A stretch of DNA of 64,000 bases, from positions 77,934,001 through 77,998,000 of the forward strand of contig NC_042997.1 of NCBI RefSeq assembly GCF_006345805.1, in the 5' to 3' direction. The notes below the pieces were generated by a model. That model was not told the DNA's origin and ran no database searches. It was given only the letters and a program-made list of their open reading frames with translations. The stretch comes from Octopus sinensis. Its lineage: Eukaryota. Shown piece after piece: positions 1,336-64,000 of this stretch; the first letter of the stretch is position 1, and each line of letters opens with the position of its first letter. Made by a program: the position numbers and the translations under genes.

Positions 1336-1484
1336 CTACATAGGATATAAACCCCATCATAACTACTTAATGGTAATTAAATGATAATTATAATTACACA
1401 AATGATATCTATGATTGCTGAATTGAATACTAAAATTATTTAAATGATGATTATAGTTATTCAAATAATAATTAAATTACTTAA

Positions 1485-13900: not shown

Positions 13901-14431
13901 CAGTTGCATTTGTGCCATTTTATTTTGCTAAATAATGTACCAAATCTATTTTTATTAGTTTCATATTGTCCTACCATATGTGGATTTACCTAAAAATTAA
14001 TTTGATCTATATTTGAACATAATAAATTTCATTAATTTCAAAATTAGACGAATTTCTTTATTTTGTATAAGTAACATGAAATTTGAAAGAGGTGAAATTA
14101 TAACTATTGCATCTTTGTGCTTTCTTTCATCTTTTGTTTCAATCATTAGACTGCGGCCACGCTGCAGCACCGTCTTGAAGAATTATTTTAGTCAAATGAA
14201 TCGATCCCAGTACTAACTTTTAAAGCCTGGTATTATTCTATCAGTCTCTTTTGCTGAACAACTATGTTATGGGATGTAAACACACCAATACTGGTAGGGG
14301 GATAAAATAGGCATAAAGACATTATATAAGAAAAGAAATGACACAGGAAAAACAAAGATTATGTCATGAACTTCATTACAGCTGTTTCTGCTTTAAGAAG
14401 CAGTGGTCTCTTGAGTACCTGGCTAACATCC

Positions 14432-14652
14432 TGTTATGTGTAGTTGGGTTCTAATGGGATAGACAACCAATATGAAAGCCATTGTTATTGTTTACGTGTT
14501 TATTTACTTTTTCATGTTACACGGACTTGTCAACATTCAGCGTAGTGATACACTATATACTTTACACACAGTTGTACTGTTCACTAACAAAATAGTGCCA
14601 AGAGTGGGAATGTATTCTATGCACGTATACACATAGATATGAATGTGTAACA
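14432..14652 (-). repeat. 3' LTR (221 bp)
   Basis: TG...CA ends; TATA-like and AATAAA motifs on the minus strand. Confidence 0.95.
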
Positions 14653-14839
14653 TCCCTTCTTCTTGAAAAAAATTAAAGGGGTCTTCTGGCAGTGATGACA
14701 ATATAAGTAGTCTCCCTTACACTAATGGATTGTCAGCGCCAGGTGGCAATCCTGTAGCAGAAACCGTGAGATTATTCTGCCTCTGCTTTGTAATCTAGCT
14801 GAATTAGTTACTTATCTTTTCATTTTCTTCCATTTTTCT

Positions 14840-17473: not shown

Positions 17474-18862
17474 TCAACATTTCACAAAGCACCCGACTGT
17501 ATCGTCAAAGCATTCAGAGTACATGCTTATCAGTTCTTCTTTGGTTGTGATTGGTGGTCGGTCTTTGATAGGCATATCACTGTCAATCCTGCTTGGAGCT
17601 GCTTTCACTTCAGCATTGATTGATACAATGTTTAGCTTTTTGCAGGTATTGAGTCCAAGAATTGCTGGTCCTTCTGTTCTTGTGACATAAAAAGAACACT
17701 TGATTGTTTTTCCTTTGTGTGTCCCTGTGATAGTTATTTTACCCAGTTGTGGAATCCTGGTACCTCCGTACGCAGTGAGGATTACATCACTTGGTGTGAG
17801 GATTCCTTCTTTGACTTTATCCTCTTCTGTCATGTGTTCTGAGAACATCTTTTTGTAGAGGTTGACAGGTAAGATATTACTCTGGGCTCCAGTGTCAATC
17901 TTTAGCCTTAAGTCTATGTTTGTTCGTTTCCTGCCAGACTTCTTCTGTATTCTTATTGTTGTGTATGCCTCATTTTCTCTCTGGTCGTCATTTCTCGTCT
18001 CATGCACATTTATTGTGCCGACTGCCAAGAATTCCTCCTCTGAGGTGTTTTGTTGTCGGGCATGTATATCTCTTCTTCTATTTCCGCTCATCTTTGAAAA
18101 TTGGGGTTTGTTTTTCTGGGATTTTGTTAACCTACACATTTTTTCCCAGTGGTTAAGTTTTCCACATGCTTTGCAGTGTGTACCGAATGCAGGACATTTC
18201 TTTCGGTTATTGAATTCATGCTCTATACCACAGTACTGGCATGTTCTTTGTTTGCGGATATGTGTCCTGTGCCTAGATACAATATCTACACTGCTGCCTA
18301 GTGAGCTTGTTTGTAAGCTAAGTGAGGCCACTTGTTTGATAGTAGCTTCGAATGCTCTTGCAGTGTCTACTGCTTCTATCAACTGGAGAGCGTCCTTACC
18401 TATGAGGGATTTCTGAACTTCCTTATGAGCACACCCCCATATTAATTGATCAACGATTCTTTCGTCCTTATCTTTGAATTTGCATTTTTCGGCAACATTC
18501 TTTAGTCTGGACAGGAAATTGTCAATCGTTTCTTGTGGGTCTTGTTTCAGGCCCTGGAATTCGTATCTGTGAATTCTATGGTTCAATCTGGGCTCCAGGT
18601 GCCTTTCAAATTCCTCTATAAGTGTTTCTGGGTTATTGCAATCCGATTCTGACATATCCCAGCTATTGAATAGGTCTAGACTTTTATTGCCCATCCATAA
18701 GAGGATATAGCTTACCTTCTCATCATTAGTCGTGCCTTTCAGGAAACTTTTGAAAGCTAGTTGAGTTTTCTGTTTGAATTTCTTAAATGCTTCCAAAATA
18801 TCATCAGAGTCCCAATTCATGATCAGATGTAGATTCATCTGTACGGCGACGGGGGTTGCCAT
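17474..18862 (-). CDS. Gypsy Gag-protease
   Basis: CCHC knuckle CKACGKLNHWEKMC; protease KIDTGAQSNILP; ends at an in-frame TGA. Confidence 0.9.
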   Translation of the reverse strand: MATPVAVQMNLHLIMNWDSDDILEAFKKFKQKTQLAFKSFLKGTTNDEKVSYILLWMGNKSLDLFNSWDMSESDCNNPETLIEEFERHLEPRLNHRIHRYEFQGLKQDPQETIDNFLSRLKNVAEKCKFKDKDERIVDQLIWGCAHKEVQKSLIGKDALQLIEAVDTARAFEATIKQVASLSLQTSSLGSSVDIVSRHRTHIRKQRTCQYCGIEHEFNNRKKCPAFGTHCKACGKLNHWEKMCRLTKSQKNKPQFSKMSGNRRRDIHARQQNTSEEEFLAVGTINVHETRNDDQRENEAYTTIRIQKKSGRKRTNIDLRLKIDTGAQSNILPVNLYKKMFSEHMTEEDKVKEGILTPSDVILTAYGGTRIPQLGKITITGTHKGKTIKCSFYVTRTEGPAILGLNTCKKLNIVSINAEVKAAPSRIDSDMPIKDRPPITTKEELISMYSECFDDTVGCFVKC

Positions 18863-18969
18863 CTTGAATCCTCGTGTTGTCCGAAGACGAAGCGATGTTT
18901 TGTCTGTTAAATTCCTGGTTCGTTGCGTTTCTGTTTTGTTGTAAAGGCACAGTTTCCGATTAATTATTT

Positions 18970-18982
18970 ACCGCTGCCACCA
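18970..18982 (-). promoter_or_regulatory. Primer-binding site, tRNA-Leu type
   Basis: 13-nt complement of ACCGCTGCCACCA, the 3' end of animal tRNA-Leu as I recall it. Confidence 0.75.
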
Positions 18983-19202
18983 TGTTATGTGTAGTTGGGT
19001 TCTAATGGGATAGACAACCAATATGAAAGCCATTGTTATTGTTTACGTGTTTATTTACTTTTCATGTTACACGGACTTGTCAACATTCAGCGTAGTGATA
19101 CACTATATACTTTACACTCAGTTGTACTGTTCACTAACAAAATAGTGCCAAGAGTGGGAATGTATTCTATGCACGTATACACATAGATATGAATGTGTAA
19201 CT
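18983..19202 (-). repeat. 5' LTR (220 bp)
   Basis: Near-identical to the 3' LTR; adjoins the PBS. Confidence 0.95.
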
Positions 19203-42900: not shown

Positions 42901-45900
42901 TTTCTTTGTTGGCCTTCTTGTGCTCTCAGAGCATCCACTTCCCTTACTAATCAGTGTGTCAAAGTAACAGAGGCTAACTACTTCTAATGAGCTTTCCTGG
43001 TATAAGGAATATATTTCATGGATGCTTCTACTGCTAGCTACTCTTGTGCATCTGCTACATATGAAGTCTTTCTTTGTTGACTTGCTTGTGTTACTACTAT
43101 GTCTCATGTGCAGCCACAGTTTATATGTAGTTTACAGCAATGCTTCATAAACTATCTGATGTGGCATACTGGCAGTTTTTTTCCCAATGTGCCAGGGACT
43201 GGTAATATTTCTTAGTAATATTAATTAATACTGGATATAACATATATAATCATCATCATGTTTAACGTCAGTTTTCCATGCTGGCATGGGTCGGATGGTT
43301 TGACTTAGGTCTGGATAGCTAGCGATTGCACCAGGCTTCAATCTGATCTGCCAGTGTTTCTACTGCTGGATGCCCTTCTTAATGCCAACTACTCTGAGAG
43401 TGTAGTGGGTGCGTTTTACGTGCCACCAGCACAGGAGCCAGTCAGGCGGGCCTGACATCAATCAACGTTCGGATGGTGCTTTTTATGTGCCATTGGCATG
43501 GGGCCAGTCAGTGAGTACTGGCATCGGCCACATTTGGATGGTGCTTTTTACATGCCACCGGGACAGGAGCCAGTCAGGGGGCACTGGCCACAGCTATGAT
43601 ATAATATTTAATAAAAGTTGACAATTTCTTATCTTATATTTATTTTGTAAACAAATTATACAATATTACATAAGCATTTTAAAATGTTTCTTTCTTTTCT
43701 GGAAACAAACCATGTACTGGCAGCTGATGGCTTGTGGATCAGCATCAGTCCATGAACCACCACTTTAAGTAGCACTGGCTTATAGTACAGATTTCCTACC
43801 TAGTTCTTTTCTACTTATTGAGTATTGTCACCTCTCTGATACAGTAAAGCCTTATTTTCTTTCTTGCTAACAAAAACTTTTGTCATTGCTTTGTTTATTT
43901 TCAGGCCTTTTGATTCTAGGTTTTGGTGTCACATTTGAAATTTCTTTAATTCTTTGGCTGACTCAGATATGAAGCCTAGGTCATCAGCTGATAGCTTTTC
44001 CAATTGCTTGTCTTAAATCCCTGTGTTATGACCTGGAGAACAATAATGAAAAAAGAGTTGAGAACTGAATTCTAGATACCTATGTGTACACTGAGTTCCT
44101 TTTAACTCTTACTTTTCCAACAGTTTCTCTTAATGTCATTTTCACGTCTCTTATGCCATTTCATTTAGTTTTGTCACCACAGAACTACAGAGCAAGGCTT
44201 TCTCTAGGATAACAAATACTAGATGTATTGGTTTGATCTTTGGCAAGAACTTGTGTACTTATCTTACTTGGAAAAGGACATTGTGGGTACCTTCCACTTG
44301 CTTCTAACTAGGGTATCTCTTGCACTTGTTGTAGTCAATGATACTATTATACCAGTGATTGTGAATGACACCTCCCTGTATTAGTTTGTCAGATATTTTC
44401 AGCATCATAGTGATTATTTTTGATGGTCCACTTGCTTGTCCCTTCCTTTACATTCTTAATTGTTCTTTCAACTGTGTAGTTATCAACTTCATTAGCAAGT
44501 CTCTCAGTATTGTTTATTTGAGACAGTTTATCTTTATTCCATACATTCTCCTCATTCAGCAACCTTTCATGGTAATATTTGTATTACTTTTAGAATCAGT
44601 GAAGGCAAGTGCGGCATCATAATTCCATAAATATTTTTCCCCAACAATATCTGGATTTGCTTTGATACACTGCTTTATATTCAGGAACACCTCACATCTC
44701 TGGTTCTCTCATCATAGAACATTGGCATACTACTTTTAATGTTTCTCTTTGCTATCTATAACTTCTCTTCCATGTAACTGATATTGTTCTTTGCTCTCTT
44801 TTTCAATCTTTCCATTCTTTCATGGCTCTAACTGCTGTACCATTCCACCATCATGCTGCGTCCAGCTGGAACCTTGTGGGATCCATAGTTCCAGTTTGTG
44901 GTTTACAGCAATTTCTTTCAAACTTCTAGTTCTGTATATTATTAGTCTCTATCTCTCTTTTTTGATATATGACTGCTTGCCTGGTTAATAATGAAAGCTT
45001 TAAATGTGTAGAAAACTTAAAGAAAAACAATATAATGTTTTTTGATATTGTGTTATTCATGTAGGATGATTCTTGTAACCTTTATTTTTTTTTCAATTAC
45101 TCATTGGTTCAAAATATTCTGTTGAATATAATTTTATCAGTTTATTAGTGATAATCTTGCATATATATTTATAATATATATTTTATTATAATTGCAATTT
45201 TTTTCTTTATTATTTAGCCATTTAGCACAACCTGCTGCCATTTTTGGTTACCGAAGTTCTAACAACACTCAGAGAATGTAAGTACAACTTTACGAACTTC
45301 TAATATATAAATTTTTTCAATTTACGAATACTTTAGTATGAAAAGAAATGCTAAGTTATAGCTCAATATACAGATTGACTTTTAGGTGGATGAATATTAC
45401 AGTAAATACTAACTTGTAGAAAAAAAAACATGAAGTTTCGTCTTTTGGTACAGTAAAATTATTGTTATTTAAAGTATTTATTCAAATAAAAATATTTGTG
45501 TGATGTTAAATGTATATTGTTAGAATCTAAAGTGGTGGATTTTATATCTTGACTTATATCAAAATAATACAACTTGAAGAATCATTGAATGTTGACTTTG
45601 CTATTGCAGAATTCTTGAAGGAAATGATCGTGCTAATACCTTCAGTGTCAAGAGTAAAGAAGTGGAGGTTATTACTAGCAGATTGAGTAGCAATCCAGAA
45701 AATCAAGCTGGGAGCAACAAGGTAATTTTTTTTTTTGTATGACTTATAAAAAATGAATTTTAAAAATTGTATCTTTTGAGTGCAAATCTATTGTGATAGT
45801 AGTTGGTTTTATAAACTATTTTTTATGTTGCATGTAATAATAGAGAGTACAGCATTCATTTCAAGAACTAAAGTGGTTTTTTTACTTTTTCATTTAAAAA

Positions 45901-48900
45901 CAAAGGAAATTAATAAATTCCTCTTTCAGTTGGTTCTTCTCAAGTTTTTTAATTTGTATATGAAGCCATACGAATCCAGTAAATTGTATTTAATGTTATA
46001 AAGACATTTTACCTGTTCTAGTTAAAATTCTATTCCAAATAGGTATTTACTCAATAGATTTCTTTTACCGTAACTTTTTAAATGATTAAAATAATTTGAC
46101 AGCCTTTAATGAAAGGCTGTCAAACCTCGTTGCTGTTCACAGAAATGGTGTGTTTGTTGCTTATTGCCTTCGAGGTGAGAGTCTTCTTTGTTTCAAATAT
46201 GAATAATATTTGAATATTTTACAAAAACTTAATTTTTATAAATTTATTTGTTGTTACTTGTCTACTCTGATCACTTAAAATGTAACCAGTTTAATCAGTT
46301 TGCCAAGTATAATTTTGATAAGTTGATTGTATTTTATCAGTTCTAAATGCCATAATTTGAACTTAAGTGAACATCTTAGATTAACTGTCTAAGATATTAC
46401 TCTCATTTAAATTGAATATACATTGCAAACTGAGGACAATGTGTAGTGAAGGAAAAAAGTAAAACCTGATTTCTTATATAAAATTGATGAAAATAATTAA
46501 ATAGGAATTTTATTATTCCTGTTTGTATAAGTTGATGGATTTGAATGAAAACATCTAGAAAGTTACTTTACATTAAATACTTTTTTCTTTTTTATTTATT
46601 TTTATAATTTTTAGGTGAAAACAACAACAGTTGTGAAATTTGAGTGGGAAGCTCGGAAATATTTAGGCAACCTCGTTGCTGTTCACAGAAATGGTGTGTT
46701 TGTTGCTTATTGCCTTCGAGGTGAGAGTCTTCTTTGTTTCAAATATGAAGTGTACTCTTGTGAATGTTGGGACTTCAGCATTAACAGTGGGAAACCTGTT
46801 TCAAAACTTTTTTCAAATTGAGTTTGAGCAAGGGTATTGAAAAACTGGTTCTAGCACCTAAATGGCTAAAAGTAGAGGAGAAAAAAGAAAATAGACAGGC
46901 TTTTTGAATGATTAACATATAAATTACCTGTAGCATACAAAACTGATATATGATGATAAATTTTAATCTTTTAAAATCTGGGTTTATTTTGAATTTTGAC
47001 TTGATTGTGTACAGATTCCAGTTGTAATGTAATGCTTTTTCTTTTGGTTACTTGCATCTGAAAATATGGTAGGTCCTACTTATAGTTTATGTTCCCTTCA
47101 TCATCCTCATCATCATTTTATGTTGGTTTTTCTCAGCAGCCATCAGTTGGATGGATTGTCATAGTTTGTTGCTCTTTTAGAATTACTATACTCATACATA
47201 TGTTGAGAACCATGTTTTGCTATGTTCCAATTTTTGGCATGGCTTCTTATCACTGGATGTTCTTCCTATCACCAACAACTTTTTAGACTGTACTGGGACA
47301 CTTTATCATTCTGTGGTTACTAGAAAGGTTGTTTTGTTTCTGACAAGATTAAAGAGTTTACTCTGCTGTATGTTATCTCTATTTGTTCATCAGTATCACA
47401 GAGATTATGATGTCCCTGACAAGATTTAAGAGTCCTCCACCCATATAACTGAATACAGTGCTCCCTCTTTATAACACAGGTTATGGGGTCCAAGAAAACC
47501 AACCGCGTTCTATCCAGGCCACAGATTCACGGGTAAAGGGGTAGGGTGGCAGGCGATAATAGAAAAAAATGAGATATTTGGTTTGATTAGTAAAGTGCAC
47601 GAACAAAAAAAAACATTCAAGTTTAACATTTATTATACTGTACCAATAAATTACTTACAAAATATCATGAATTATAGTAAATACAATAACTTAAAAAAAT
47701 GTTTACATTGTTTATTTCCGTAACTAGTTCCTGTTGACTCTAAAATAAGAATTTTCAATAAATACTTATGAAATGCTTTTACATTGCATTTCTGATGTTA
47801 TACCACCTAGTGAATGAATTGTAAGTGCTTAAAAGTATGTTTGATTAATAAAGTTACATTGTATGAAAGTTCACATTTATTTTTTATTCAATCACATAAA
47901 AAAGTCTGTCAGCTTCTTCTGGCACAATCCTTTCCTCATCTTAATCTGTGTCTGCCTGAGCAGGTTCTTCAGATGCATGGTGTAGACTGGGTCATGGTCT
48001 TCACACTCTGTATTCTATAAGCCACTTGAGATGTGAGATAGCCCCTGTGTGTGTCTTGGCTGGGGCTGGTGTCTCTGATTCCTCTGTGTCATCTGGCTCC
48101 TCCTCAATCTGCTCCACAATCTGGGTCTGTTAGTGTCTCTGTTGGGGGTATGGCTTCTTCTGCTTTCTGCCACCTGTTAACCCAGTCTTTCAGGGTCATT
48201 GTCTCCTCTAGACATTGTTTTGCTGCCCTGGTCTCCTCAGTGAATCCCATGAATTCCTCTTTTTCTGGCCCTAGCTCTGGCTGTTGGGGCTGTGGGAAGG
48301 CTGCATCAAGGGTTTTGTTCCAGCAGTTGGCTATGGTCTTGGTTGACACTGTAGCCCAGGTTCTGCCTGACAAGTAACTGGTATCCTTGATAGTAAGCTG
48401 CTTCAGATAGTCTGGAACACTAAGTGGGGATTCTGTCATTTCCAGGATGAGTTCCTTCTTGCAGGTGGCTTTGAAGGCCTGAATGATGCCAGCATCACAG
48501 GACTGTATTTTGCTGGTTGTGTTCATAGGTAGATAGAGGACCTTGATCTGGCCATCTCTGGTCTGTAAGATGTCTCCCTTTGGGTGGGCGGAGCAGTTAT
48601 CTAGCAAGAGGATAGCTTTCTCCGGTAGGTTGAGGTTCCTAAGGTGGCTCCTAACAATAGGGACAAATAACTTGAAGAACCATTCTTCAAATATGCTTGA
48701 AATTATAATGAATGAAGTGGAATATGGTTTCCTTTTTATATAAATTTGTACCTCCAGGGTGTTAATTACATCCTTTAAATATTAATTTGTTTGACTCATT
48801 TGAACCCCCAATCAAATTGTGGAAAACGAACTGTCAAAAGTGCTCACTGGTCAAAAAGGTGTTGTTTTCATCACAAAATCAAAGAAATTATGCACACAAA

Positions 48901-51900
48901 ACATGTAATGAGCACCAGATTATATGGTAACTGACTGCAATATTTTCAAGCTGTTGATTAAGGTATTTTGTTGAAATTTGCTGAAATTCTGCTTTTAATC
49001 AAGGTTTTTGCAGGTTGTGAGCAATAATGAAGGAAATTCTGCTTCAAATTATTTGGGGTTCATTCAAACCACCTGTGTTATATGCGGGGACGCGGTATAG
49101 CGAGACACCTTATAAAGAAAGAGCACTGTAGGAGGAAAATAAAGTGCTAGAGAGTCTAAAGGAAGGGAGTCATAGTGGAAGTGTGATTAGAAAAGAATGT
49201 AATGTGTGTGTTTGTGTATTAGAGAGAATGGTTACATGATGGTTGTTGGTGAGGGAATTGAAACATGGTTAAGAGACAAGTACATAATGGTTCATAAGAT
49301 ATTGAATAGAAAACATAACCAAGATGGTGTTATAAGAGAGACAATGAGAGTGCTCTGTGCAAGAGAGAGTAATAAAAGATAGAATGAACGACAGCTACTT
49401 GGTGGCTTGGTGATGAAAGAGGGAGTAATGAAAGCAGAAGTGAGTGATGTGTGTCAGTGAGTGATATACTTGAGGTGAGAAAGCGTGATAAAAGTGGAAA
49501 CGAGAGAGAAAGTACAATGGATAGCAATAGAGATAAATCAGAATTCTCTTTCTAATCAGTTATGCTAACTCTTTCAATAGCTTTCATAATCTGATCCATC
49601 AATTTGATACTTTTGTAATTGCTCTTTTGTTTCTCCTTTGTTTTTGTAGCAATTGACAATGATATAACTATGTCAACCATTAGATACACTGTACTACCTG
49701 ATTGACTATGTGATTGCCCTATCTCATCAGTTATTTTCAGCATCTCAGCAACAATCTCTTCATTGCCCAGCTGCCTTCTCTTAGTTCGCTGCACTTAAAG
49801 TAGGCCCTCCCTCTCCCATGTAATTTCATTCAACCTCTTATGGTAGCATATGGTTTTTGACATCAGTGAAGACAAATGCACTGTTATCACCCTGTACACA
49901 CCGCTATTTCAATATCATTGCAGGAACTTATTTTATTGAAGGATGAAAGCCAAGTTGTTTTTAGTAATAGTTCTGAAATTAATAACTCTGATGTTGTTAC
50001 TGACATGAATTGTAGTACTCCTCTGTTCATTTAAGTGATGACTACGATTCTAACAATTGATTGTGTGGCACAATCTTTTGAAAAAAATCTATGTTGTGAT
50101 TAATCTTCTACTTTCATTTTTATGTAAATAAAAAAAAATCTTTTTATATGTTATTGCCTAATCATCTTTTTTTTTATATTGAAAATACAAGCACTTTTTA
50201 TATGTACACAGGTAAATCTGGTGCTAATGTACGCATACTTAATCGGAAAACTGCTGACAGGACATTATTAAAAGATTTCTGTGGACGTGTGACTGACTTG
50301 GCTTTTGCTTTCACTGATAAGATACTGCTTGCAGCCATTGATGAAATGGGAAACCTTTATATACATCAAATTACTGGAGCCTCAGAGGGCAAAATTCAGT
50401 ATCCTTTTGAAACTTCTTTACTTTTTTAGTTGTAATGATTGCATTAATATGAAGCCTTTTCTTGTATGAAAAACAAAGGGAATTCTGGAGTTGGGATTTC
50501 TCAATATTTTAATATGTAAATGGAAGCTTTGGGTTCTATCGAGACAAGATGTTGGGAATAGGGGAGATAATAGCAGTTATAATAAAAATTCCCCAATAGT
50601 TATTGCCCTTGAATTTTTATATTGAACTGAGGCATTTTCAAAGTTTAAATGATTTTAAATTTAGTGATATTTCACCATTAAAATTACACGTTAAACAAGA
50701 TATTCCACATCTCAAGATACTCTTGATTATAATCTGTTGCTTTCATAACATCTTAACACTACCATGATGAAACTTTTTCTTTTAAGATATGATCTTTTTT
50801 TTTCCCAAGTGTATCCTGATTATATTGAGAAATATTAAGTTATCATTTATGTATAGAAAACTTTTTTTTTTATTAAATATGTTAAATTGGGAACAGTTTG
50901 ATATGTACTGGGCTCTAAGTAATTTCAGCATGTAGTTTCAAATGTTTAGATAGAAATAGGTATCAGCGATGTTAATGAAGAATTTCGTTTTTTTTATTTT
51001 TTATTTTTCAAGAATCTCCATTTTTTTGTTATAAAGAAGCTATAATTATTATTCAGTCAATTTGGTGTCACTTTAATTCCTTTTCCCACGATACTAAGTG
51101 GGTGAAAGGCTTGTTAAAAATAGAATACATTTCCCTTAAACTGTGTTTAGATCAAAATTATTGCTGAACATTGTCTCATACAATGATAATCAGTCTGAAT
51201 TTCACAGAGTCTTCTGGTGTCCATACATTCCTGATGAATCTGAAGATGATACTTCTCAGGATAATTCTTTTTCTAAGATGCTTCTTATCACTCATGGAGA
51301 AAAGGTTATTAAATATTATTTTACTACATCCAGCATTATTTTAACTAATTTAAAATTTTTGTTCTTAAATGTTAAATATGTAATTTTATTTTTGAAATTA
51401 AAAAGGAAGTAGTATTTACGATTTGAACAACTGGACTTCAAAAAAATAATTTGTGGTCTGGAGGAAGAGGCTGCATTGAGTCTTCACAGGTCCTCTGAGA
51501 TAATTGAAATTAATGCAGTTAATGTTCTTGAATATTTACAAGTCAATGACTGTAGATGAAATGTGTAGGCAGTGAATTCTAGAGAGCAGTGTTCTGTGGT
51601 GGAAAGAGGAAAGATTGAGTGTTTAGTGTGGGACCTGAGATTGGTAAGGGTGCACATGATAAAGGTGAGGAGTGCTTGAGTAGAAGTGGTATGAGTCAGC
51701 TCTGAGGAGCATATACCATTCTGGTTACAAAGGAAAAGACTGAGAGGGGTCAGCTTCTTTAGAAGTGGTCTTTGGTGTTTGTGTGTACCATCTCATGTAT
51801 CAAAGTAGTATGCTATTGTGGATCCCATTGGAGTTTTCTTGAGAGTTAGTAGTTTTTATGGGCTAATGTATTTTCAGTCTTCTGAAGAGGGAGGGTAGTC

Positions 51901-54900: not shown

Positions 54901-55841
54901 TTTGTCTTTTCTTTAGGCTGAAATATGGAATGTAGACATGGTATGCCAAAAATATGGCACAGATAGTGTAATGTCTAATGAAGTAACTTGTGGTGTGCTG
55001 CGAATTAACAGTCATACAAAGCCTATTGCTGATGCAGCATTTTCACCTGATGGATCAGCACTTGCTACAGCCAGTATGGATGGCATGGTTAAATTTTTCC
55101 AGATCACCATGAATGAAGGTCCATCTCCCAGGTAAGAATTATTAATGTTTTCTTTTTATCTAGGATAATTTTCTATTTATGAAGAGGTAAAAAGTATTAA
55201 GTTATTGTTTGTAACTTGTATAATTCAGATCTGCTGAATAGAGCAGTTACATTGACTCAGTTAATATATTGTTAGAAAGCTGTAATAAATTTTTCTTTAG
55301 TGACCTGTTTAGTGGATGTTTGCTTAATGCTGGAAAATTGGGTCTGGCATTGATTTTGTAGATTATTCTAATTTCTTGAAACAATTAGCTATTCAATACT
55401 CTTCAATAAATGTTTAGTATATGCTATTAAACATCTTCAACAACATTTATCATCAGATGTCTCAAAAAAATATTAATTTTTTATACACTCAGAATATAAC
55501 ATACTCTTAGTTCAGATATATTATTGCTATACCAAGTTTTCTTTGAATGCTATTTAAATATGTTCACTTTTTTTTAAAAATTCAATTTAATTTTGTATTA
55601 TAATTATTTGTTCATAAAATTTGAGAAATATTTTTAGTACTCATTGTAGGTGTCTCTTACTAACAAACTTAGGTTTAGTGACTCAGTTGAATATGCTAAA
55701 TGTTGGTGTTATAAAGTTATGTTTTAAACATGAAACTAGTAATTCCTGTAATTTCAGAAGACTCCATGAGTGGTCACCTCATGGAGGACAGCCCCTTTCT
55801 TGTCTTTTCTTCCTTGATGATCACCAGAACCCTCATCCTGA
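36380..55841 (+). CDS. EDC4: Enhancer of mRNA-decapping protein 4 (Ge-1), N-terminus and WD40 domain; join(36380-36845, 40548-40593, 45218-45277, 45610-45721, 46615-46720, 50212-50398, 51151-51304, 54917-55131, 55758-55841); continues beyond the right edge
   Basis: The phase-consistent spliced frame contains KEVEV...GSNKVK...YLGNLVAV, RTLLKDF.GRVTDLAFA, EMGNLY, FHRVFWCPYIPDESED, FSPDGSALATASMDGMVKFFQI and RLHEWSPHGGQPLSCLFF. These are motifs I recognise from the EDC4 WD40 region. Confidence 0.93.
38130..38669. mobile_element. Penelope-type terminus with a perfect 175-bp inverted repeat
   Basis: Arms 38225-38399 and 38495-38669; flanked by (TA)n. Confidence 0.75.
38428..38479 (+). ncRNA. Type I hammerhead ribozyme-like motif
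   Basis: UGAG CUGAUGA [U-AGA...GUC-GAGUU-GAC...UCU-U] GAAAC GUAC GUU CUCA; helix II imperfect. Confidence 0.6.
39460..39575 (+). ncRNA. Hammerhead ribozyme-like motif with C4 core variant and 86-nt helix II
   Basis: CU CCGAAGA GGCC...GGCC GAAAC AGCU GUC AG; helix I weak. Confidence 0.55.
39975..40140 (-). mobile_element. tRNA-derived SINE
   Basis: A box TGGCTGTGTGG, B box GGTTCAGTCCC; ends in a (TA)n tract. Confidence 0.8.
40548..40593 (+). CDS. EDC4: EDC4 small exon (46 nt)
   Basis: ttttcag| acceptor, |GTATGT donor; bridges phase 1 to phase 2 as required. Confidence 0.65.
42880..43140 (-). mobile_element. RTE LINE fragment (Cys-rich insert region)
   Basis: KLWLHMRHS...FICSRC, LEVVSLCYFDTLISKGSGCSES. 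Confidence 0.55.
43249..43600 (-). mobile_element. SINE-like repeat, same family as 1485-1875
   Basis: catcatcatgtttaacgtcagttttccatgctggcatggg plus ~65-bp units. Confidence 0.8.
43640..44960 (-). mobile_element. Decayed LINE RT region
   Basis: LSADDL near 43985, preceded by a degenerate QGS-like motif. Confidence 0.55.
45218..45277 (+). CDS. EDC4: EDC4 small exon (60 nt)
   Basis: tatttag| acceptor, |GTAAGT donor; HLAQPAAIFGYRSSNNTQR, phase 2 to 2. Confidence 0.7.
45610..45721 (+). CDS. EDC4: EDC4 exon (112 nt)
   Basis: ILEGNDRANTFSVKSKEVEVITSRLSSNPENQAGSNK; AG/GT bounded. Confidence 0.9.
46615..46720 (+). CDS. EDC4: EDC4 exon (106 nt)
   Basis: VKTTTVVKFEWEARKYLGNLVAVHRNGVFVAYCLR; AG/GT bounded. 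Confidence 0.92.
47456..49128 (-). mobile_element. pogo/Tigger-like DNA transposon, deleted
   Basis: TIR cagtgctccctctttataa / ttataaagaaagagcactg with TA flanks; LDNCSAHP...YLPMNTTSKIQSCDAGII. Confidence 0.85.
49550..49800 (-). mobile_element. RTE LINE RT N-terminal fragment
   Basis: IVAEMLK...SNYKSIKLMDQIMKAIERV. Confidence 0.7.
50212..50398 (+). CDS. EDC4: EDC4 exon (187 nt), followed by U12-type donor
   Basis: KSGANVRILNRKTADRTLLKDFCGRVTDLAFAF...EGKI; donor |GTATCCTTT. Confidence 0.92.
50399..51150 (+). other. U12-type (minor spliceosome) GT-AG intron of EDC4
   Basis: 5' site GTATCCTTT; branch-like TTCCCTTAAAC at 51131-51141, about 10 nt before the AG; no polypyrimidine tract between branch site and AG. 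Confidence 0.8.
51151..51304 (+). CDS. EDC4: EDC4 exon (154 nt)
   Basis: SKLLLNIV...FHRVFWCPYIPDESEDD...THGEK. Confidence 0.92.
51430..52380 (-). mobile_element. Decayed LINE 3' fragment
   Basis: Purine-rich plus strand; degenerate NSLP-like 3' motif; no ORF. Confidence 0.35.
54917..55131 (+). CDS. EDC4: EDC4 exon (215 nt)
   Basis: AEIWNVDMV...FSPDGSALATASMDGMVKFFQI. Confidence 0.93.
55758..55841 (+). CDS. EDC4: EDC4 exon (84 nt)
   Basis: RLHEWSPHGGQPLSCLFFLDDHQNPHP; donor |GTGAGT. Confidence 0.92.
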
Positions 55842-56665
55842 GTGAGTATACAATCTTTCTATTTCTTTAGATTCTTGTAATTATTGTTAGCAATAAAGAC
55901 TGATCAGCATTTGCACTATAAACCCTAAAGCTTATTTTCCTTTATTCTGTCAGGCTTTTAGAATTATAAGTTGTATATTCTCCATGTTCCTGGAAGAACA
56001 CCTCTCATGGATAAAAACTGTCCTGTGGTTCACTTTTATTATATTCCTATAAAGCTCTAATAAATACTGATTAATGCTATTTAAGCAGCTGTAATATAAT
56101 TTACTTTGCTTGAGATATATAATTTTTTATGCAGTACCAATTAAGATGTACACAACAAATAAATAGTAAAGTGAAGCAAAAATAGAACAGGATAGAACAA
56201 AGAGATATCGAAACTTCTGAAAAAATTAATCATATTGTAATATACATAAGTTTATGTATTGCTTATCCTATTTTGAACAATTTTGAAATGTTTTCCGACT
56301 ATTACAATTTTACCCTTACAGCTAGGAACTCTAAAGGAAAATGTATATTTAGAAGATGTATTTATGTTTGCTGGCCCTGAAACTTCAATGATTTTGTGTG
56401 TGTGTGTACATACACAAACACTCCCAATTTACAAAAGAGCTACAAATAGTTTCATACTTTAGAGATACAATACTTTGGCTGATTTATATAGCATGCCATG
56501 TATCTTTAAAGCATGAAACTATTAATATCTCATTTGTAACTTGTGTATATTAAATATTTATCTATCACTGGATGGAGTACTTTTCTTCATCCATCATACC
56601 CATAACAGAACTGTAAACTAATACATATATACATACATATAATTGTATATATATAATTATATATA

Positions 56666-56753: not shown

Positions 56754-58069
56754 TATCTGTAAAATAATATGTGACAATTATTCAATAGCCAAGATCTGAG
56801 TTTCGGATGCCGAGGTGGAAATCCACAACACTATCTCTTCGGTTATCTGGCCATCTGAAAAACGCTATGAAAAAAGACCATTATACAAAGGGAAATTACT
56901 GTGTTATAATTCCGCTACTTATATAAAAGCACTAATCCAATGACTGCTAATTATATATACATAAAAAGGTATGTATATAATTATATATACATATAATTGT
57001 ATACATATAATTGTATATGCGACATGGAAAGATGGCTTATCTGGAAAAGCAGCTTAGACCCTACTACATGTCTAAACTCAAGGACAGAACTTTTCAGATC
57101 ATGCCCACATGTGACAAAATTTTTGTTAATTTTTGGTCCCCCCAAGAATACAGATAGAACTTGCTTTCTATATTATGTCCCAAAAAGTTTTTTTTATCTC
57201 ATTATACCTTTTATTTTTTTCATATATTTATATATTTTTACACATAATAATTTTTTCTGTACTCTTCCATCCTGCATTTTTTCCTGTGCTTATATAGACG
57301 TGTATATAGATTCATTTGTACACGTGTATGAATATGTATGAGTGGGCAGGTATGTATGTATGTATATAGATGTGTGCGGGCATAAGAATACATATATATA
57401 TATATATATATATAGACGCTTTTACTCAGTATTTTTACAATTTTTTCGGTTTGGGCGTATGTATAATCCTTTTTTTTGTGTATGCGTATATAAACATGTA
57501 CGGGTATGTACATATATGGGCGTGTGTGTGTGTGCGTGCATAAGGGCATGTCCGTATATGAACGTGGTTTTTACGCTTTGTATACTTCCTTGTTTTTTTT
57601 CTGTTTTGTTGCTTTTTTTCTGTATTGTTACCTTTAACCATGTTTTTTCTTGTGCTTGTGCGTATATAGACGTATGTATGAACTTTTACAGCGTGCGTGT
57701 GTGTGTATGAGTTTGTATATATATGCGTATACATTTGGCAAAAAATGTGAGTGAAGATGTGTATGTTTTCATAGTGACGTACACGTACGCATGTGGGTGG
57801 GCGAGCGCGCATGTGTACGTATGATTATGCTTACGTGTTTACTATGAACTTTTAACCGTATTTTAATTAGCGGTCATTGGATTAGTGCTTTTATATAAGT
57901 AGCGGAATTATAACACAGTAATTTCCCTTTGTATAACGGTCTTTTTTCATAGCGTTTTTCAGATGGCCAGATAACCGAAGAGATGATGTTGTGGATTTCC
58001 ACCTCGGCATCCGAAACTCAGAGTTTTATCTTGGCTATTGAATAATTATCACATATTATTTTACAGATA
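56754..58069 (+). mobile_element. Penelope-type element remnant with ~200-bp inverted termini
   Basis: Arms 56754-56953 and 57864-58069, each carrying a hammerhead-like motif. Confidence 0.7.
57969..58031 (+). ncRNA. Type I hammerhead ribozyme-like motif, C4 core variant
   Basis: AGAUAA CCGAAGA GAUG...CAUC-C GAAAC UCAGA GUU UUAUCU; 6-bp helix I. Confidence 0.6.
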
Positions 58070-58197
58070 AATTTCCTCTATTTACATAATATTGAGGTAT
58101 CTTTCTTTCTTTTGTTATCTTACTGTTTTTACCAATAATTATGTATATATATATAATTATATACATCAAAATAAGCAACAAGAATGACTCCGGTGAT

Positions 58198-58279
58198 TTG
58201 GTACGATCGTTTCGTACTACATCATTTTATTAAATGTTGTATTACAACAGTTTTAAAATGCTGAGCACTCATCAGTCAA
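58198..58279 (-). ncRNA. Type I hammerhead ribozyme (inverted copy)
   Basis: UUGA CUGAUGA GUGC...GUAC GAAAC GAUC GUA CCAA; mismatch at the first helix I pair. Confidence 0.65.
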
Positions 58280-59796
58280 TTATAGAGGTTTTCCATTAAT
58301 ACAAACATTTTCATATCAAGTGGCAACATTATAGAGAAGGTAGATACACAGACAAAGATGTGGATTTAAATTTTAAGAATATTTGGGGTAGTGGAGCCCA
58401 TCAACTGACTGACTGAGATTCAGTTGTTCCAGACTACTGTAAGGTTCTGAGAGGGAAGAACAAATTTATGTCTATACTGGAAAAAAAATTTTCCAGCCTC
58501 CCATAAATATCATAAAATAATTTCTAAAAAATCAGTGAGAATTTCATATTCCACTCTCCCAAATATGGCTACCATAGTAGCTAGACTTAATAGTAAAAAC
58601 ATTAAGCTAGCCAGGAGTGGAATGAATAGTAACAACAATGATAGTAATAATAATTGTAAAAATAGCAATAATAATAATAATAATAATAATGATAATAACA
58701 TTGATGTAAATAGTGATAATAGCAATATCAATAATAGAGGTGGTATAGATAAAAGTATGGTAGGTGATAATAATGAAGATGAATTAATAATTAGTAACCC
58801 TAGTTTGCATAACAACGTAATTACTAATAGTGAAAATAATACTAATACTAACAATAATTTAAATAACAGTAATGGAAGTGAACTGTCCTTAAATAATTCC
58901 AGTACCGGACACTATCCCCCCAGTTGTAATTGTAGGATTAGATCAAAATGTCCGTTATCTGGCCTTTGTTCTGTCCAAAACGTGATTTATAAATGCACGA
59001 TAATAACTTCAAACAATAGCTTTCTTTATTTTGGTTCTTCGGTAGATTTTAAAAAACGTCTAAACAATCATTTTTCCTCTTTTAGGCTCAAACATAAGGC
59101 AGGTTGCACAACATTATCTAGTAAAATTTGGGAACTAAAATACAAATAATATAGAATTCAGCCTAAAGTGGGATATAGTTAGAAGAGCGCAACCTTATAG
59201 AAATAATAGGGATGGTTGTCAACTTTGTTCTATGGAAACTTATGAAATTTTGAAATATCAGGGTAATACAAATCTGTTGAATAACCGTTTGGAGCTGGGA
59301 GTATCTGGTATACATCGTACGACCCGAACGTTTAAATACTTTAAATAATAATTTTGTGAATATTCCTATATTTTTCAAATTTTAATTCTTTATAACCAAA
59401 TAAAAAGGAATATACCATACTAGCTTTCAAATTAACATTTATAGATGACTAAAATAACTTCACTGCAAACTTAAAATTGAATTCTTCTTTTTTTCTAAAA
59501 TTAAACTGTATGAATCAAAATAGTTGGAATCCTAAATAGTATGAATCCCAAATAGTAGGAATACTAAATAGTATGAATCCTATGTCCCTAAAGAAACTAT
59601 TCAGTTCACCTTGATTATCTCACTTCTATTTCTTAATATATAATTAGTCTAAGATATCTTTATAAAATATAGGAACCAAATAGGAACGAATATACCATAC
59701 TGGTTTTAGTTTAACACCCATAAATGATTAAAAAACTTCATTGCAAACTAAAATTAAATTCTTTTTTATAATGTTCTCCAATACTAAGTAGTACTG

Positions 59797-59988
59797 TGCA
59801 GGTGGCACGTAAAAAGCACCCACTACACTCACGGAGTGGTTGGCGTTAGGAAGGGCATCCAGCTGTAGAAACATTGCCAGATTAGACTGGAGCCTGGTGC
59901 AGCCTTCTGGCTTCCCAGAACCCCGGTCGAACCGTCCAACCCATGCTAGCATGGAGAACGGACGTTAAACGATGATGATGATGATGAT
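59797..59988 (+). mobile_element. SINE-like repeat (5'-truncated) inside the Penelope element
   Basis: ...ccatgctagcatggagaacggacgttaaac(gat)n. Confidence 0.85.
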
Positions 59989-60863
59989 TAATCCTATGTC
60001 CCTAGGGGAAACTATTTGGTTCATCTTGATTATCTCATTCCAAATTCTTAACATATAATTAACCTAAGATATTTTTACCTAACTAATTAACTTTTATCCG
60101 CAGGTAGTAAATTTTATTTCCAATAGATCCTATATTTTAAGTCATTAATATCAACTCACTATCCATGAAATTTGAATAATTTACTCTTCTAAGGTACCTC
60201 TCTTCATATTATAAAATATCGCCTTCTACTATACCTTTGAATATCTTCCTTCTTTGATTTTCCCTCTTTCATCTTTCTTAGTATATATTTTGACCCCTAA
60301 TATGTTCACTTGATTAATAAGGCTTTTTCCCCCCAGTTAATAAGTACTATGCCTACTCATAATAAGTGATAGTCTCTTTCTCCAAATTTGAATAAATTTT
60401 AGATTTATATTTTTTCCATTCTTCTAACATGTCAGAGTACTTGGAACTTATAGACCAACTGTTGTGATGATGTGCATAGGGTTTGTAAGGTCTCTGTGAA
60501 TGTTATTGTGACCATTTGACATTGACCTAGTTCTCCTAATGCCGAATCTGTTCATCAAATAGTAGTAATTGGCATTTAGTCGTGACAATGCTGTCTTCCA
60601 CATAAATTCCTTATATGGAGCTATGACATCTCCTTTACCCCATTTCTATAATTAGAAAATCTTTATTGTCTCCTTTCATTTGTTCTTTCCTCTCAAAACC
60701 TTACAGTAGTCTGGAACAACTGAATCTTAGTCAGTCAGTTGATGGGCTCCACTACCTCAAATGTTCTTAAAATTTAAATCCACATCTTTGTCTATGTATC
60801 TACCTTCTCTATAATGTTGCCACTTGATATGAAAATTTTTGTATTAATGGAAAACCTCTATAA

Positions 60864-60949
60864 TTGGCTGATGAGTGCTCAGCATTTTAAAACTGTTGTA
60901 ATACTTAGAACATTTAATAAAATGATGTAGTACGAAACGATCGTACTAA
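60864..60949 (+). ncRNA. Type I hammerhead ribozyme, canonical core
   Basis: UUGG CUGAUGA GUGC...GUAC GAAAC GAUC GUA|CUAA. Confidence 0.8.
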
Positions 60950-61137
60950 ATCACCGGAGTCATTCTTGTTGCTTATTTTGATTATAATCACCCCACGGAT
61001 TTTTATGGATGACACCATACAGAATTCTGGTGCATCTAAATTAAGTACCATATTCATTTGAATCTAAATTTTTGCTGAACTTATATAATTATATATATGT
61101 ATATATATAATTATACACACACACACACACACACACA

Positions 61138-62412
61138 TCAGGTCATCCCATAAGTTGTGCCCGATTTTGCCTTTTTTAAAATTGAACGAAATTTGAATAG
61201 TATTTTAGAATGTCTAATAGAATTAAAAATTATTTTTATGCATTTGTGTACATTTAAACTAATTAAATATTATTTTACAGAATAATAGAATTAAAATTTC
61301 TTTGATTAAAACCCTTTCTTACATGGAAGTATCCAAAGAACATTTGAGGCACATAATGCTTTATGATTATAAAAAAAAGGAAAATCTGCTGCTGAAGCCA
61401 CTTGAAACGTAGTCAGTTTATGGGAAAGAATGCTTGAATGAAAGAACTTGCAGAAGATGGTTTTCAAAATTCAGAAGTGGAGATTTCAGCCTTGAAGATG
61501 AAGATCAAACAGGATGTCTAGTTGAGTTTCATGATAAGCTCCCTGAAGTGTTACTTGATGAAAATCCTGCATTATCAGTTGAAGAATTGGCAATAAAGCT
61601 TAGTTCAAACCATAAAACTGTTCATCGTCATCTTCAACAACTTAGAAAGGTTCCTAAACTTGGAAAATTGGTGCCTCATGAATTGTCCGAAAGCAACTGC
61701 AAATCCCGAGTTGACATCTGCTCTTCTCTCCATTCTCGCAAACTCATTTCACCCTTTTTGGATAGACTTGTGACGAAAAATGGATCTTCTGTCGAAATGT
61801 TAAACGTCATAAACTGTCGCTTGGTAAAAGGGAAAAAGCTCAACCACAACCGAGAAGGGAACTTCATGGGAAAATGGTTCATCTCTCTATCTGGTGGGAT
61901 TGCAAAAGAGTAATTCACTTTGAATTGTTACCACCTAATGCAACAATCAATGCTCAAGTCTACTGTCAGCAATTAGTGTTTGAACCAAGCTTTGAAGAAA
62001 AAAAAGACCCGATTTAGTGAATCGAAAAGGATTGATGTTTCATCAGGACAATGCACGATCCCACACTGCAAAGATCACATCAGAGAAGATCAAAGAGCTT
62101 GGCTGGGAAAAAATTCCTCATCCACCTTATTCTCCCGACCTTGCTCCTTCAGACTACCATTTGTTTCGTAGTTTACAGAATCATTTGGGGGACATAACTT
62201 TTGCAAGCCAGGAAGAGGTCGAAATTGACATTTCAGAGTTCTTCGCTTTGAAGCCAAAAGAGTTTTACATTGATGGGATTAAAAAGCTTGTAAATACATG
62301 GAAGGAAGTCATAGATAATCAGGGAAAGTACATTGACGATTCAATTAAATATAACATTTGACCACTTGTTTTCTTTATTCAAAATTTGGACAGAACTAAT
62401 GGGATGACCTGA
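61138..62412 (+). mobile_element. Mariner (Mos1-like), full-length, pseudogenised
   Basis: TIR tcaggtcatccca / tgggatgacctga; RRWFSKFRSGDFSLED, LVPHELSE, HQDNARSH, PYSPDLAPSDYHLF; frameshifts. Confidence 0.92.
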
Positions 62413-63399: not shown

Positions 63400-64000
63400 G
63401 TATAGTGCAAAATATGAAAGGGTAGTGTTATGCAGGTTGAACTGAATCCTACTGTATTGCTTGCTCATGAATTCTGCCAAATGCGAGTTTTCTTTTCAGG
63501 TACATGAAGCTACTGTCCCCCGTCCCAGGGTCTCTAGGGCCCATACCTCTCACACCCTCAGGGTTGACACACTGAAAGGTAGGTCTGGCGAGATTGTTGA
63601 GATGCTTGAACGGAGATGTGTCGATATATGTTGCATCCAAGAAGTGAGGTGGAGAGGAGGTTCTGCTAGGTTCTTCACAGGCAAAGAACACAGGTACAAG
63701 ATTTTCTGGGCAGGGAACACTGACGGGGTTGGGGGTGTGGGTATACTTCTCGCTGAAAAGTGGGTAGTTAAGGTAATTGAGGTAGTCAGAGTATGCGACA
63801 GAGTACTTAAGATTAGATTAGTGCTTCATCATGGATTAGCGACCATTATATCGGCCTATGCCTCTCAGCCAGGGCTACCCGATTGACAGAAAGACAGATT
63901 CTATGACACCCTACTGCAGACTACCTCGTTGACGAATGACAGGGACCTTCTCTTTGTGGCTGGTGACTTCAATGAGCATGTTGGACAACATGCTGGGGGC
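63400..64000 (+). mobile_element. RTE-clade LINE, 5' part (AP endonuclease)
   Basis: RCVDICCIQEVRWRG, GVGILLAEKW, ISAYASQPG, VAGDFNEHVG; internal stop; homologous to 1-1335. Confidence 0.9.

What the first reader, a model, noticed from the sequence alone, without database searches (positions are those of the whole stretch)
60864..60949. Fully canonical hammerhead in sense orientation inside an EDC4 intron
Seen: helix I UUGG/CUAA, core CUGAUGA, helix II GUGC/GUAC extended by CAUUUUA/UAAAAUG around a long AU-rich loop (59 nt in total), GAAAC, helix III ACGAUCGU and a GUA site, with predicted cleavage after 60945. It lies on the EDC4 coding strand downstream of exon 55758-55841. Inference: nascent EDC4 pre-mRNA could be cut within this intron, which might affect splicing or output of a decapping scaffold gene.
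Basis: partly seen in the sequence, partly recalled or inferred. Interest (0 to 1): 0.72.

Follow-up and report, generated by a model that had tools for sequence, protein, structure and literature searches.

The report
Retrotransposon hammerhead relic in EDC4 intron
The hammerhead ribozyme motif is really there, but it belongs to the terminal repeat of a dead, truncated Penelope-like retrotransposon that landed in an intron of an octopus-like EDC4 gene, which is an ordinary place to find such motifs in invertebrate genomes.

Summary
The motif at 60864-60949 (+) exists exactly as described: an intact hammerhead core, a 4-bp helix I, 59 nt between A9 and G12, and a GUA site cut after 60945. It lies on the coding strand of an EDC4 gene, downstream of exon 55753-55842. 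It is not a free-standing host element. It sits in the right arm of a 305-nt inverted repeat (58165-58465 / 60678-60982). That repeat encloses the frameshifted C-terminal remnant of a reverse transcriptase/GIY-YIG protein, and (TA)n flanks the whole unit. Full-length relatives in Octopus sinensis and in marine metagenomes carry the diagnostic motifs of the Hydra clade of Penelope-like elements. Most of them have a hammerhead in their flanking repeats, with compensatory changes in all three helices. So this is a Penelope-like-element (PLE) hammerhead of the known "minimal, dimeric" type: a 2-bp helix III with a palindromic loop. Here it also has an unusually long helix II insert. Cleavage of EDC4 pre-mRNA is unlikely for four reasons: there is only one sense copy, the hammerhead fold is 7.4 kcal/mol worse than competing local hairpins, the strand can pair over 302 bp with the upstream inverted arm, and sister copies are decaying neutrally. 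This is a new member of a known kind, of low interest.

The parts
60864..60949 (+). Type I hammerhead motif with an intact core. Helix I is UUGG/CUAA. Helix II is GUGCU/AGUAC and closes a 49-nt insert. Helix III is 2 bp plus a GAUC loop. The predicted cut is after 60945.
58198..58279 (-). Inverted second copy of the same hammerhead. It has an A.C mismatch at 2.1/1.1, G-C instead of G.U at 2.2/1.2, and a 4-nt deletion in the helix II insert.
58165..58465 (-). Left arm. It is an inverted, 5'-truncated copy of the element's 3' end (pseudo-LTR) and lacks the tail.
   Evidence: (I2, I15)
60678..60982 (+). Right arm (pseudo-LTR part), 95-97% complementary to the left arm.
60983..61080 (+). One-sided 'tail' of the element. 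It is absent from the left arm but conserved in the O. sinensis copies L001 and L007.
   Evidence: PLE tails are described in the papers read
58451..59345 (+). Remnant of the PLE ORF, equivalent to aa 476-809 of the 809-aa L001 ORF. It covers the linker CNCRIRSKC (CxCx5C), the GIY-YIG domain and CQLC. It is broken by a stop and frameshift near 59146 and padded with an Asn-rich low-complexity stretch. No RT part is present.
59803..59984 (-). SINE-like repeat inserted into the element's 3' UTR after integration. It is absent at this position in L007, and other copies lie at 1484-1657 and 43327-43434.
   Evidence: (I7, I17, I19)
58130..58164 (.). (TA)n-rich target on the left flank. TATGTATATATATATAATTATATACA recurs, with TA-unit differences, at 61096-61122 and may be a target-site duplication.
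61081..61135 (.). (TA)n/(CA)n target on the right flank.
55753..55842 (+). Last EDC4 exon detectable in the window (Ge1_WD40 profile positions 220-250 of 329). The element lies in the intron that follows it.

Best explanation
The motif is the hammerhead ribozyme carried in the pseudo-LTR of a Penelope-like retrotransposon (PLE) of the Hydra clade. One insertion event into a (TA)n tract in an EDC4 intron left a composite unit at 58165-61080. The unit consists of an inverted 301-nt 3'-end fragment, then a 5'-truncated sense copy (the C-terminal GIY-YIG part of the ORF, the 3' UTR and a pseudo-LTR with the hammerhead), and then a one-sided tail. In active elements the hammerhead is transcribed as part of the PLE RNA. 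It is thought to self-cleave as a dimer between two sense copies or with help from the element's protein, but its role in transposition is unresolved. In this copy the ORF is dead and the motif is a molecular fossil. It happens to keep every core nucleotide, while sister copies have lost some. Shown here: the anatomy, the homology, the clade motifs, and hammerheads with covariation in relatives. Inferred: a single-event origin, no meaningful cleavage of EDC4 pre-mRNA, and the function in active elements (taken from the literature).
For: (1) Inverted repeat arms 58165-58465 / 60678-60982 (95-97%) contain the motif on both arms. (2) Between the arms lies a GIY-YIG remnant (Pfam PF01541, E=1.8e-5). 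Its only protein hit is from Octopus sinensis. [quoted passage not shown] It is flanked by inverted arms 3587-3843 / 7667-7910, each with a hammerhead motif. (3) A 14-member alignment of relatives shows the motifs listed for the Hydra clade: MRWKA and ADKT in the consensus, and CxCx5C, CxxC and CxH visible in the window and L001 sequences (against the paper's list read). There are weak RT matches: a retron RT at E=0.01 and RVT_1 at 0.0044. (4) The targets are (TA)n in the window and in L001, as reported for Hydra PLEs. (5) I found hammerhead motifs next to the ORF in 6 of the 8 non-window loci where this ORF family was the target: L001 (two), L003, L004 (inverted upstream), L005, L006 (two, direct repeats flanking the ORF) and L009. 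L007 adds a decayed copy of the window's own subfamily. The core is conserved in the relatives, and pair types differ in helix I (G-C / A-U / C-G at 2.1-1.1), helix II (G.U / A-U / G-C at 10.3-11.3) and helix III (C-G / A-U at 15.2-16.2). (6) A 90-94% identical copy in O. sinensis (L007 2708-2948) is a direct upstream pseudo-LTR. Its hammerhead carries G10.1U and A17G, which is neutral decay. (7) The one-sided tail and the shared truncation point of the left arms in the window and L001 fit the published PLE anatomy. (8) The literature reports minimal hammerheads in PLE terminal repeats, often as single or oppositely oriented copies from truncated PLEs, with low activity in vitro.
Against: The window copy has no RT, so its PLE identity rests on relatives. 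Profile tools see the RT only marginally. Rfam hammerhead models give no match. The 4-5 bp helix II closing a 49-nt insert is atypical: the PLE hammerheads described have long helix II stems with short loops. Conservation between the window and L001 subfamilies covers the whole last ~250 nt of the repeat, not just the hammerhead. The comparison within octopus therefore does not single out the ribozyme. No activity data exist for this family.
Confidence: 0.9

Rival explanations
1. Host-acting intronic ribozyme. The sense-strand hammerhead cuts nascent EDC4 pre-mRNA in this intron and thereby lowers or modulates output of the decapping scaffold.
For: The core is intact and in sense orientation in a real EDC4 intron. 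Among the three copies of this subfamily examined, only this one keeps every core position and every helix I pair. PLE hammerheads can be protein-assisted, and a related 809-aa reading frame (L001), open but lacking about 110 N-terminal residues of the family consensus, exists in an octopus genome, so intact protein-coding copies may exist in octopus.
Against: Helix III is only 2 bp and there is one sense copy, whereas this class needs a dimer. The best fold that contains the hammerhead helices is -10.3 kcal/mol against an MFE of -17.7. In the MFE fold, the hairpins GCUGA/UCAGC and UAGUACGA/UCGUACUA sequester the core and the cut site. The strand can form a 302-bp duplex (-507 kcal/mol) with the upstream arm, which is transcribed first, and that duplex pairs 82 of the 86 nt. 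Sister copies mutate at core positions, so there is no sign of selection. Keeping 16 core nucleotides intact at ~5% divergence is expected about 44% of the time (inference). Metazoan PLE hammerheads cleave poorly in vitro. No cut-site reads were seen for an active PLE in vivo.
Confidence: 0.05
2. Chance match. An AT-rich intron happens to contain CUGAUGA and GAAA with short complementary flanks.
For: The helices are short (4, 4-5 and 2 bp) and the spacer is long. The descriptor yields about 0.0125 hits per random 64-kb window, which scales to hundreds per Gb genome (inference). Rfam gives no hit.
Against: The same motif is present in the inverted arm. It is also present at the homologous position of two O. 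sinensis elements. Hammerheads with different helix sequences lie beside distant members of the same ORF family.
Confidence: 0.02
3. The host-level consequence of this insertion is a long intronic double-stranded RNA rather than a ribozyme. The two arms pair in the pre-mRNA, which could create a substrate for dsRNA-binding or editing enzymes, or affect splicing kinetics. This is compatible with the best explanation for the motif's origin.
For: The arms are 95-97% complementary over about 305 nt and lie 2.2 kb apart on one transcript. The predicted duplex has 302 bp at -507 kcal/mol, against -131 for the arms folded separately.
Against: This is purely thermodynamic. There are no expression or editing data, and co-transcriptional folding and helicases could prevent the pairing.
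Confidence: 0.3

Closest known systems
Minimal hammerheads in the pseudo-LTRs of metazoan Penelope-like elements (Cervera & De la Pena 2014, PMC4209133)
   Same: Type I topology. Short helix I of 4-5 bp without a defined loop 1. Helix III of 1-2 bp with a palindromic loop, implying dimeric action. G10.1-C11.1 is kept. Located in the terminal repeats, with many solitary or oppositely oriented copies left by truncated elements.
   Different: There is no unpaired nucleotide between A9 and 10.1. Helix II is a 4-5 bp stem closing a 49-nt, partly structured insert, rather than a 6-8 bp stem with a small loop.
Hydra clade of C-terminal EN+ PLEs (Craig et al. 2021, PMC8557442)
   Same: RWK and DKT motifs, a CxCx5C linker, CxxC and CxH around the EN domain, (TA)n targets, hammerheads present, and aquatic invertebrate hosts including molluscs.
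   Different: The octopus elements are longer than the <3 kb quoted, because of Asn-rich low-complexity expansions and a long 3' UTR. I did no phylogeny.
Conserved intronic hammerheads of amniotes (Rfam HH9 and HH10; own knowledge)
   Same: A hammerhead in sense orientation within an intron of a protein-coding gene.
   Different: Those are single-copy, conserved across species and have a stable helix III. This motif is a multi-copy transposon part with no sign of selection, and it gives no Rfam match.
Non-LTR retrozymes / satellite hammerheads (newt, Schistosoma)
   Same: Type I hammerhead with a minimal, palindromic helix III that acts between tandem copies. They are thought to derive from PLE pseudo-LTRs (abstract read).
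   Different: There is no tandem array of short units here. The motif is tied to an ORF-bearing element, and its second copy is inverted rather than direct.

Membership tests
Hammerhead ribozyme (type I) | Conserved core: C3 U4 G5 A6 N7 G8 A9, G12 A13 A14, A15.1-U16.1, H17 not G | tested here: met
   All positions are present at 60868-60874 and 60934-60945.
Hammerhead ribozyme (type I) | Three helices radiating from the core, with helices II and III closed and helix I open | tested here: inconclusive
   Helix I has 4 bp, helix II has 5 bp plus an extension, and helix III has only 2 bp with a 4-nt loop. The fold containing them is 7.4 kcal/mol above the MFE. Covariation in relatives supports the architecture.
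Hammerhead ribozyme (type I) | Site-specific self-cleavage after H17 | not testable with these tools
   This needs in vitro transcription or RNA-end sequencing.
Hammerhead ribozyme (type I) | Score at or above the Rfam gathering threshold for a hammerhead model | tested here: not met
   There is no hit at gathering or at E<=10. The compact hammerheads of relatives also score nothing, so the test is insensitive for this class.
PLE minimal (dimeric) hammerhead | Helix III reduced to 1-2 bp with a palindromic 15.2-16.2 segment | tested here: met
   The segment CGAUCG is palindromic, and ACGAUCGU is an 8-nt palindrome. L001R has CAAUUG, also palindromic, although both changes are CpG transitions.
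PLE minimal (dimeric) hammerhead | Located in the terminal repeats of a PLE, in sense with the ORF | tested here: met
PLE minimal (dimeric) hammerhead | Unpaired nucleotide between A9 and 10.1; long helix II stem | tested here: not met
   G10.1 directly follows A9. The stem has 4-5 bp and closes a 49-nt insert. Relatives L003, L004 and L009 have a U.U at that position.
Penelope-like element, Hydra clade | [quoted passage not shown] | tested here: met
   GIY-YIG is found in the window remnant. The full-length relative has 809 aa. RT support is weak but present in relatives (YRDD motif). The window copy itself lacks the RT because of 5' truncation.
Penelope-like element, Hydra clade | RWK motif, DKT instead of DKG, CxCx5C linker, CxxC and CxH motifs | tested here: met
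   The A2 consensus shows MRWKA and ADKT. CNCRIRSKC and CQLC are in the window, and CIH is in L001, compared with the paper's list.
Penelope-like element, Hydra clade | 5' truncation, direct or inverted pseudo-LTRs, one-sided tail, (TA)n target | tested here: met
   compared
Penelope-like element, Hydra clade | Phylogenetic placement of the RT within the Hydra clade | not tested
Conserved host intronic hammerhead (HH9/HH10-like) | Single-copy, orthologously conserved in the same intron across species | tested here: not met
   The motif is multi-copy. Paralogous copies sit in unrelated O. sinensis loci and carry core mutations. The orthologous introns could not be fetched.

The most novel reading that the evidence does not exclude
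The one sense copy that still has a perfect core is catalytically competent in vivo. This might work through trans-dimerisation via its 8-nt palindrome with abundant transcripts of the same PLE family, or with help from PLE protein supplied by active copies. It would then cut a fraction of nascent EDC4 pre-mRNA, making a transposon ribozyme a modulator of a decapping-scaffold gene. A milder version is that the conserved ~50-nt insert in helix II defines a new protein-dependent hammerhead variant in cephalopod PLEs.
Probability: 0.05. Interest if true: 0.55.

Novelty: new member of a known kind. Interest (0 to 1): 0.15.

Why it matters
It mostly matters as a caution. Hammerhead motifs with perfect cores are scattered by the thousand through invertebrate genomes by Penelope-like elements, and many will fall in sense orientation in introns by chance. 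A perfect core is therefore not evidence of host function. The locus is a clean textbook example of PLE insertion anatomy: an inverted truncated copy, a one-sided tail and a (TA)n target. It also shows that cephalopod Hydra-clade elements carry a hammerhead with an unusually large helix II insert. That could interest people working on how PLE ribozymes are activated.

Tried and rejected
(1) Rfam cmscan of the window at gathering and of 60600-61200 at E<=10 gave no hammerhead. The only hits were microsatellite artefacts such as mir-297. Rfam also missed all the hammerheads of relatives, so I dropped it as a test.

(2) I built a covariance model (R1) from the compact hammerheads of five relatives. 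It did not recover the 60864 motif, and it mis-aligned the left-arm copy at E=1, presumably because of the 49-nt helix II insert. It did find a second, different hammerhead family in the window.

(3) MAFFT alignment including L009 mis-aligned. I replaced it with an explicit position-by-position parse.

(4) I tried to evaluate the energy of the double-hammerhead (intermolecular helix III). It failed because that topology is pseudoknotted in a two-strand representation. Plain cofolding of two copies does not form it.

(5) I considered a DNA transposon with terminal inverted repeats and a stand-alone GIY-YIG nuclease. I rejected this once the full-length relative showed the RT part upstream and a sister copy showed a direct rather than inverted repeat.

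(6) I looked for further EDC4 exons between 55843 and 64000 with six EDC4 fragments that extend past the last exon and found none. The intron's 3' end is therefore outside the window.

(7) I could not establish the species of the window. The evidence is only that the closest copies of the element are in Octopus sinensis.

Full report
**The observation.** The sequence at 60864-60949 (+) reads UUGG-CUGAUGA-GUGCU...AGUAC-GAAA-C-GAUC-G-UA|CUAA.
- Every invariant hammerhead position is present, G10.1-C11.1 included.
- There are 59 nt between A9 and G12, and the cut site follows 60945.
- A descriptor scan required helix I >=4 bp, CUGANGA, helix II >=4 bp with up to 70 nt between A9 and G12, GAAA, a closed helix III of up to 10 nt, and UH. 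It finds this site and nothing else on either strand.
- The same scan gives 0.0125 hits per simulated 64-kb window (5 hits in 400 first-order Markov windows). That is rare per window but common per genome, so the motif alone proves little.
- Rfam finds no hammerhead at its gathering thresholds or locally at E<=10.
- 'Fully canonical' is too strong. ACGAUCGU is a loop-less palindrome, so a monomer has only a 2-bp helix III around a GAUC loop. Helix I is 4 bp with a G.U.

**The host gene.** The host-gene claim holds.
- Pfam Ge1_WD40 matches + strand exons at 50100-50426, 54917-55132 and 55618-55842, covering profile positions 44-250 of 329.
- The concatenated exons hit EDC4 fragments of Lottia, Helobdella and others.
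- tblastn with those fragments maps exons at 45614-45724, 46615-46722, 50199-50390, 51146-51307, 54917-55132 and 55753-55842, and nothing further up to 64000.
- The motif is therefore in sense orientation in an intron of at least 8.1 kb. The gene must continue beyond the window.

**What the motif sits in.**
- The repeat search shows the motif inside an inverted repeat, arms 58165-58465 and 60678-60982, 95-97% complementary.
- A second copy of the hammerhead therefore lies on the minus strand at 58198-58279. It has an A.C mismatch at the base of helix I and a 4-nt deletion in the helix II insert.
- Between the arms is a + strand reading frame (58451-59345) with a GIY-YIG domain (Pfam E=1.8e-5). 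It is broken by a stop and frameshift near 59146 and padded with Asn-rich repeats.
- A SINE-like repeat has inserted at 59803-59984.
- (TA)n tracts flank the unit.
- On the right, similarity to related copies runs about 98 nt past the repeat boundary, to 61080. This is a one-sided tail.

**What the element is.**
- The remnant's only protein hit is from Octopus sinensis.
- That locus (L001) holds an 809-aa ORF with an RT-like YRDD motif upstream of the same linker and GIY-YIG region.
- The L001 ORF is flanked by inverted arms 3587-3843 / 7667-7910. Each arm carries a hammerhead motif.
- The window remnant aligns to residues 476-809 of that ORF, so the window copy is 5'-truncated.
- Eighteen further homologues (33-50% identity) come from marine metagenome and genome contigs.
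- A 14-sequence alignment has MRWKA and ADKT in its consensus. The window and L001 sequences show CxCx5C, CxxC and CxH. Together with (TA)n targets and readily detected hammerheads, these are the features listed for the Hydra clade of C-terminal-endonuclease Penelope-like elements, which includes mollusc hosts (Craig et al. 2021).
- Generic profile support for the RT is weak: a retron RT at E=0.01 and RVT_1 at 0.0044 in one member.
- The published PLE anatomy matches the window unit point by point: frequent 5' truncation, a partial upstream copy that may be direct or inverted, and a short tail at one end.
- A 90-94% identical sister copy in O. sinensis (L007) has the same 241 nt as a direct upstream repeat. 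The inverted arrangement is therefore a property of individual insertions, not of a DNA-transposon-like element.

**Is the hammerhead a real feature of this family?**
- I found hammerhead motifs beside the ORF in L001 (both arms), L003 (downstream), L004 (inverted, upstream), L005 (upstream), L006 (both flanks, direct) and L009 (downstream). None was found in L002 or L008, which are short contigs.
- L007 adds a decayed copy of the window's own subfamily. It also holds other hammerhead motifs that are not beside this ORF.
- The core is constant in the relatives, while the helices change in a compensatory way:
  - 2.1-1.1 is G-C, A-U or C-G.
  - 2.3-1.3 is U-A, U.G or C-G.
  - 10.3-11.3 is G.U, A-U or G-C.
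  - 10.4-11.4 is C-G, U.G or A-U.
  - 15.2-16.2 is C-G or A-U.
- This is the known PLE hammerhead class: type I, short helix I, minimal palindromic helix III, proposed to act as dimers, and poorly active in vitro.
- The octopus subfamilies differ from the description in having a 39-52 nt insert inside a 4-5 bp helix II. The insert is partly conserved between the window and L001 subfamilies.
- Rfam fails on the compact relatives too, so its silence on the window motif means nothing.

**Is this copy under selection or active?**
- Within the subfamily the three copies differ at functional positions. The left arm has G2.1A. L007 has G10.1U and A17G, both expected to be inactivating. Two of the three copies have CCAA, pointing to an ancestral UUGG/CCAA helix I.
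- Window versus L007 divergence inside the motif (6 of 86) is no lower than outside it (8 of 155). This is neutral decay. The right-arm copy is simply the one that has not yet been hit.
- Thermodynamically, the best structure containing the hammerhead helices is -10.3 kcal/mol against an MFE of -17.7. The MFE contains the hairpins GCUGA/UCAGC, which sequesters the core, and UAGUACGA/UCGUACUA, which sequesters GAAA and the cut site.
- In the EDC4 pre-mRNA the upstream arm is transcribed first. It can pair with the right arm over 302 bp (-507 kcal/mol), covering 82 of the 86 hammerhead nucleotides.
- Only one sense copy is present, so the cis dimer this class relies on cannot form.
- For an active PLE studied biochemically, the ribozyme was protein-assisted and dispensable for insertion in vitro. 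It also left no detectable cut-site reads in vivo.
- I therefore rate cleavage of EDC4 pre-mRNA as unlikely (about 5%). It is not excluded.

**Verdict.** It is a hammerhead in sense orientation in an EDC4 intron, but it is a relic of a Hydra-clade Penelope-like retrotransposon rather than a host regulatory ribozyme. It is a new member of a known kind and of low interest. The one modestly unusual trait is the large helix II insert in the cephalopod family.

Noticed in passing
window 56795-58031: A second, different hammerhead-bearing relic lies just upstream. Its inverted arms are 56795-56953 / 57864-58022 (97%). A hammerhead-like motif at 57968-58031 (+) has a mutated core (CCGAAGA, U4 to C). 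The inverted copy lacks 6 nt including the cut site. An intact homologue is at O. sinensis L007 45594-45657. It was found only by the covariance model built from relatives.
   Followed up: partly
L007 46000-46110 (+), 46407-46445 (-), 20492-20578 (-): There are more PLE-type hammerhead motifs in an unrelated O. sinensis gene region. One has a 10-nt palindromic loop 3 (CAAUGCAUUG) and a ~70-nt helix II insert. One has the U3-A8 core covariant and a CCGCGG palindrome. Long helix II inserts seem common in octopus.
   Followed up: no
window 46123-46203 and 46669-46749: An 81-nt stretch containing the 3' part of an EDC4 exon plus its splice donor is duplicated at 100% identity, 546 nt apart. This is either a very recent tandem duplication or an assembly artefact.
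   Followed up: no
window 61413-62358 (+): A mariner-like transposase remnant (Pfam HTH_48, DDE_3), broken into several frames, lies about 330 nt downstream of the PLE tail in the same intron.
   Followed up: partly
window 14422-19201: An LTR retrotransposon has near-identical LTRs (14422-14651 / 18973-19201, 96-99%). It carries long minus-strand ORFs of 497 and 877 codons, so it may be a young insertion.
   Followed up: no
window 1484-1657, 43327-43434, 59794-59989: A SINE-like repeat family (88-91% between copies) is present. One copy has inserted inside the PLE remnant, and further copies are at L007 20153-20332 and 23200-23370.
   Followed up: partly
window 815-1220 and 63551-63956: A 406-nt inverted pair (86%) sits at the two ends of the window and overlaps ORFs with a weak endonuclease/exonuclease/phosphatase match. 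These look like two copies of a LINE-like element in opposite orientation.
   Followed up: no
window 61076-61146: The sub-threshold Rfam 'mir-297' and 'mir-1277' matches are (TG)n/(TA)n microsatellite, not microRNA genes.
   Followed up: yes
L005, L006, L009 (marine metagenome contigs): Rfam release 15 hammerhead models give no score at all, even at E<=10, for compact, clearly paired PLE hammerheads. This is a blind spot worth knowing about when using Rfam to check hammerhead candidates.
   Followed up: yes
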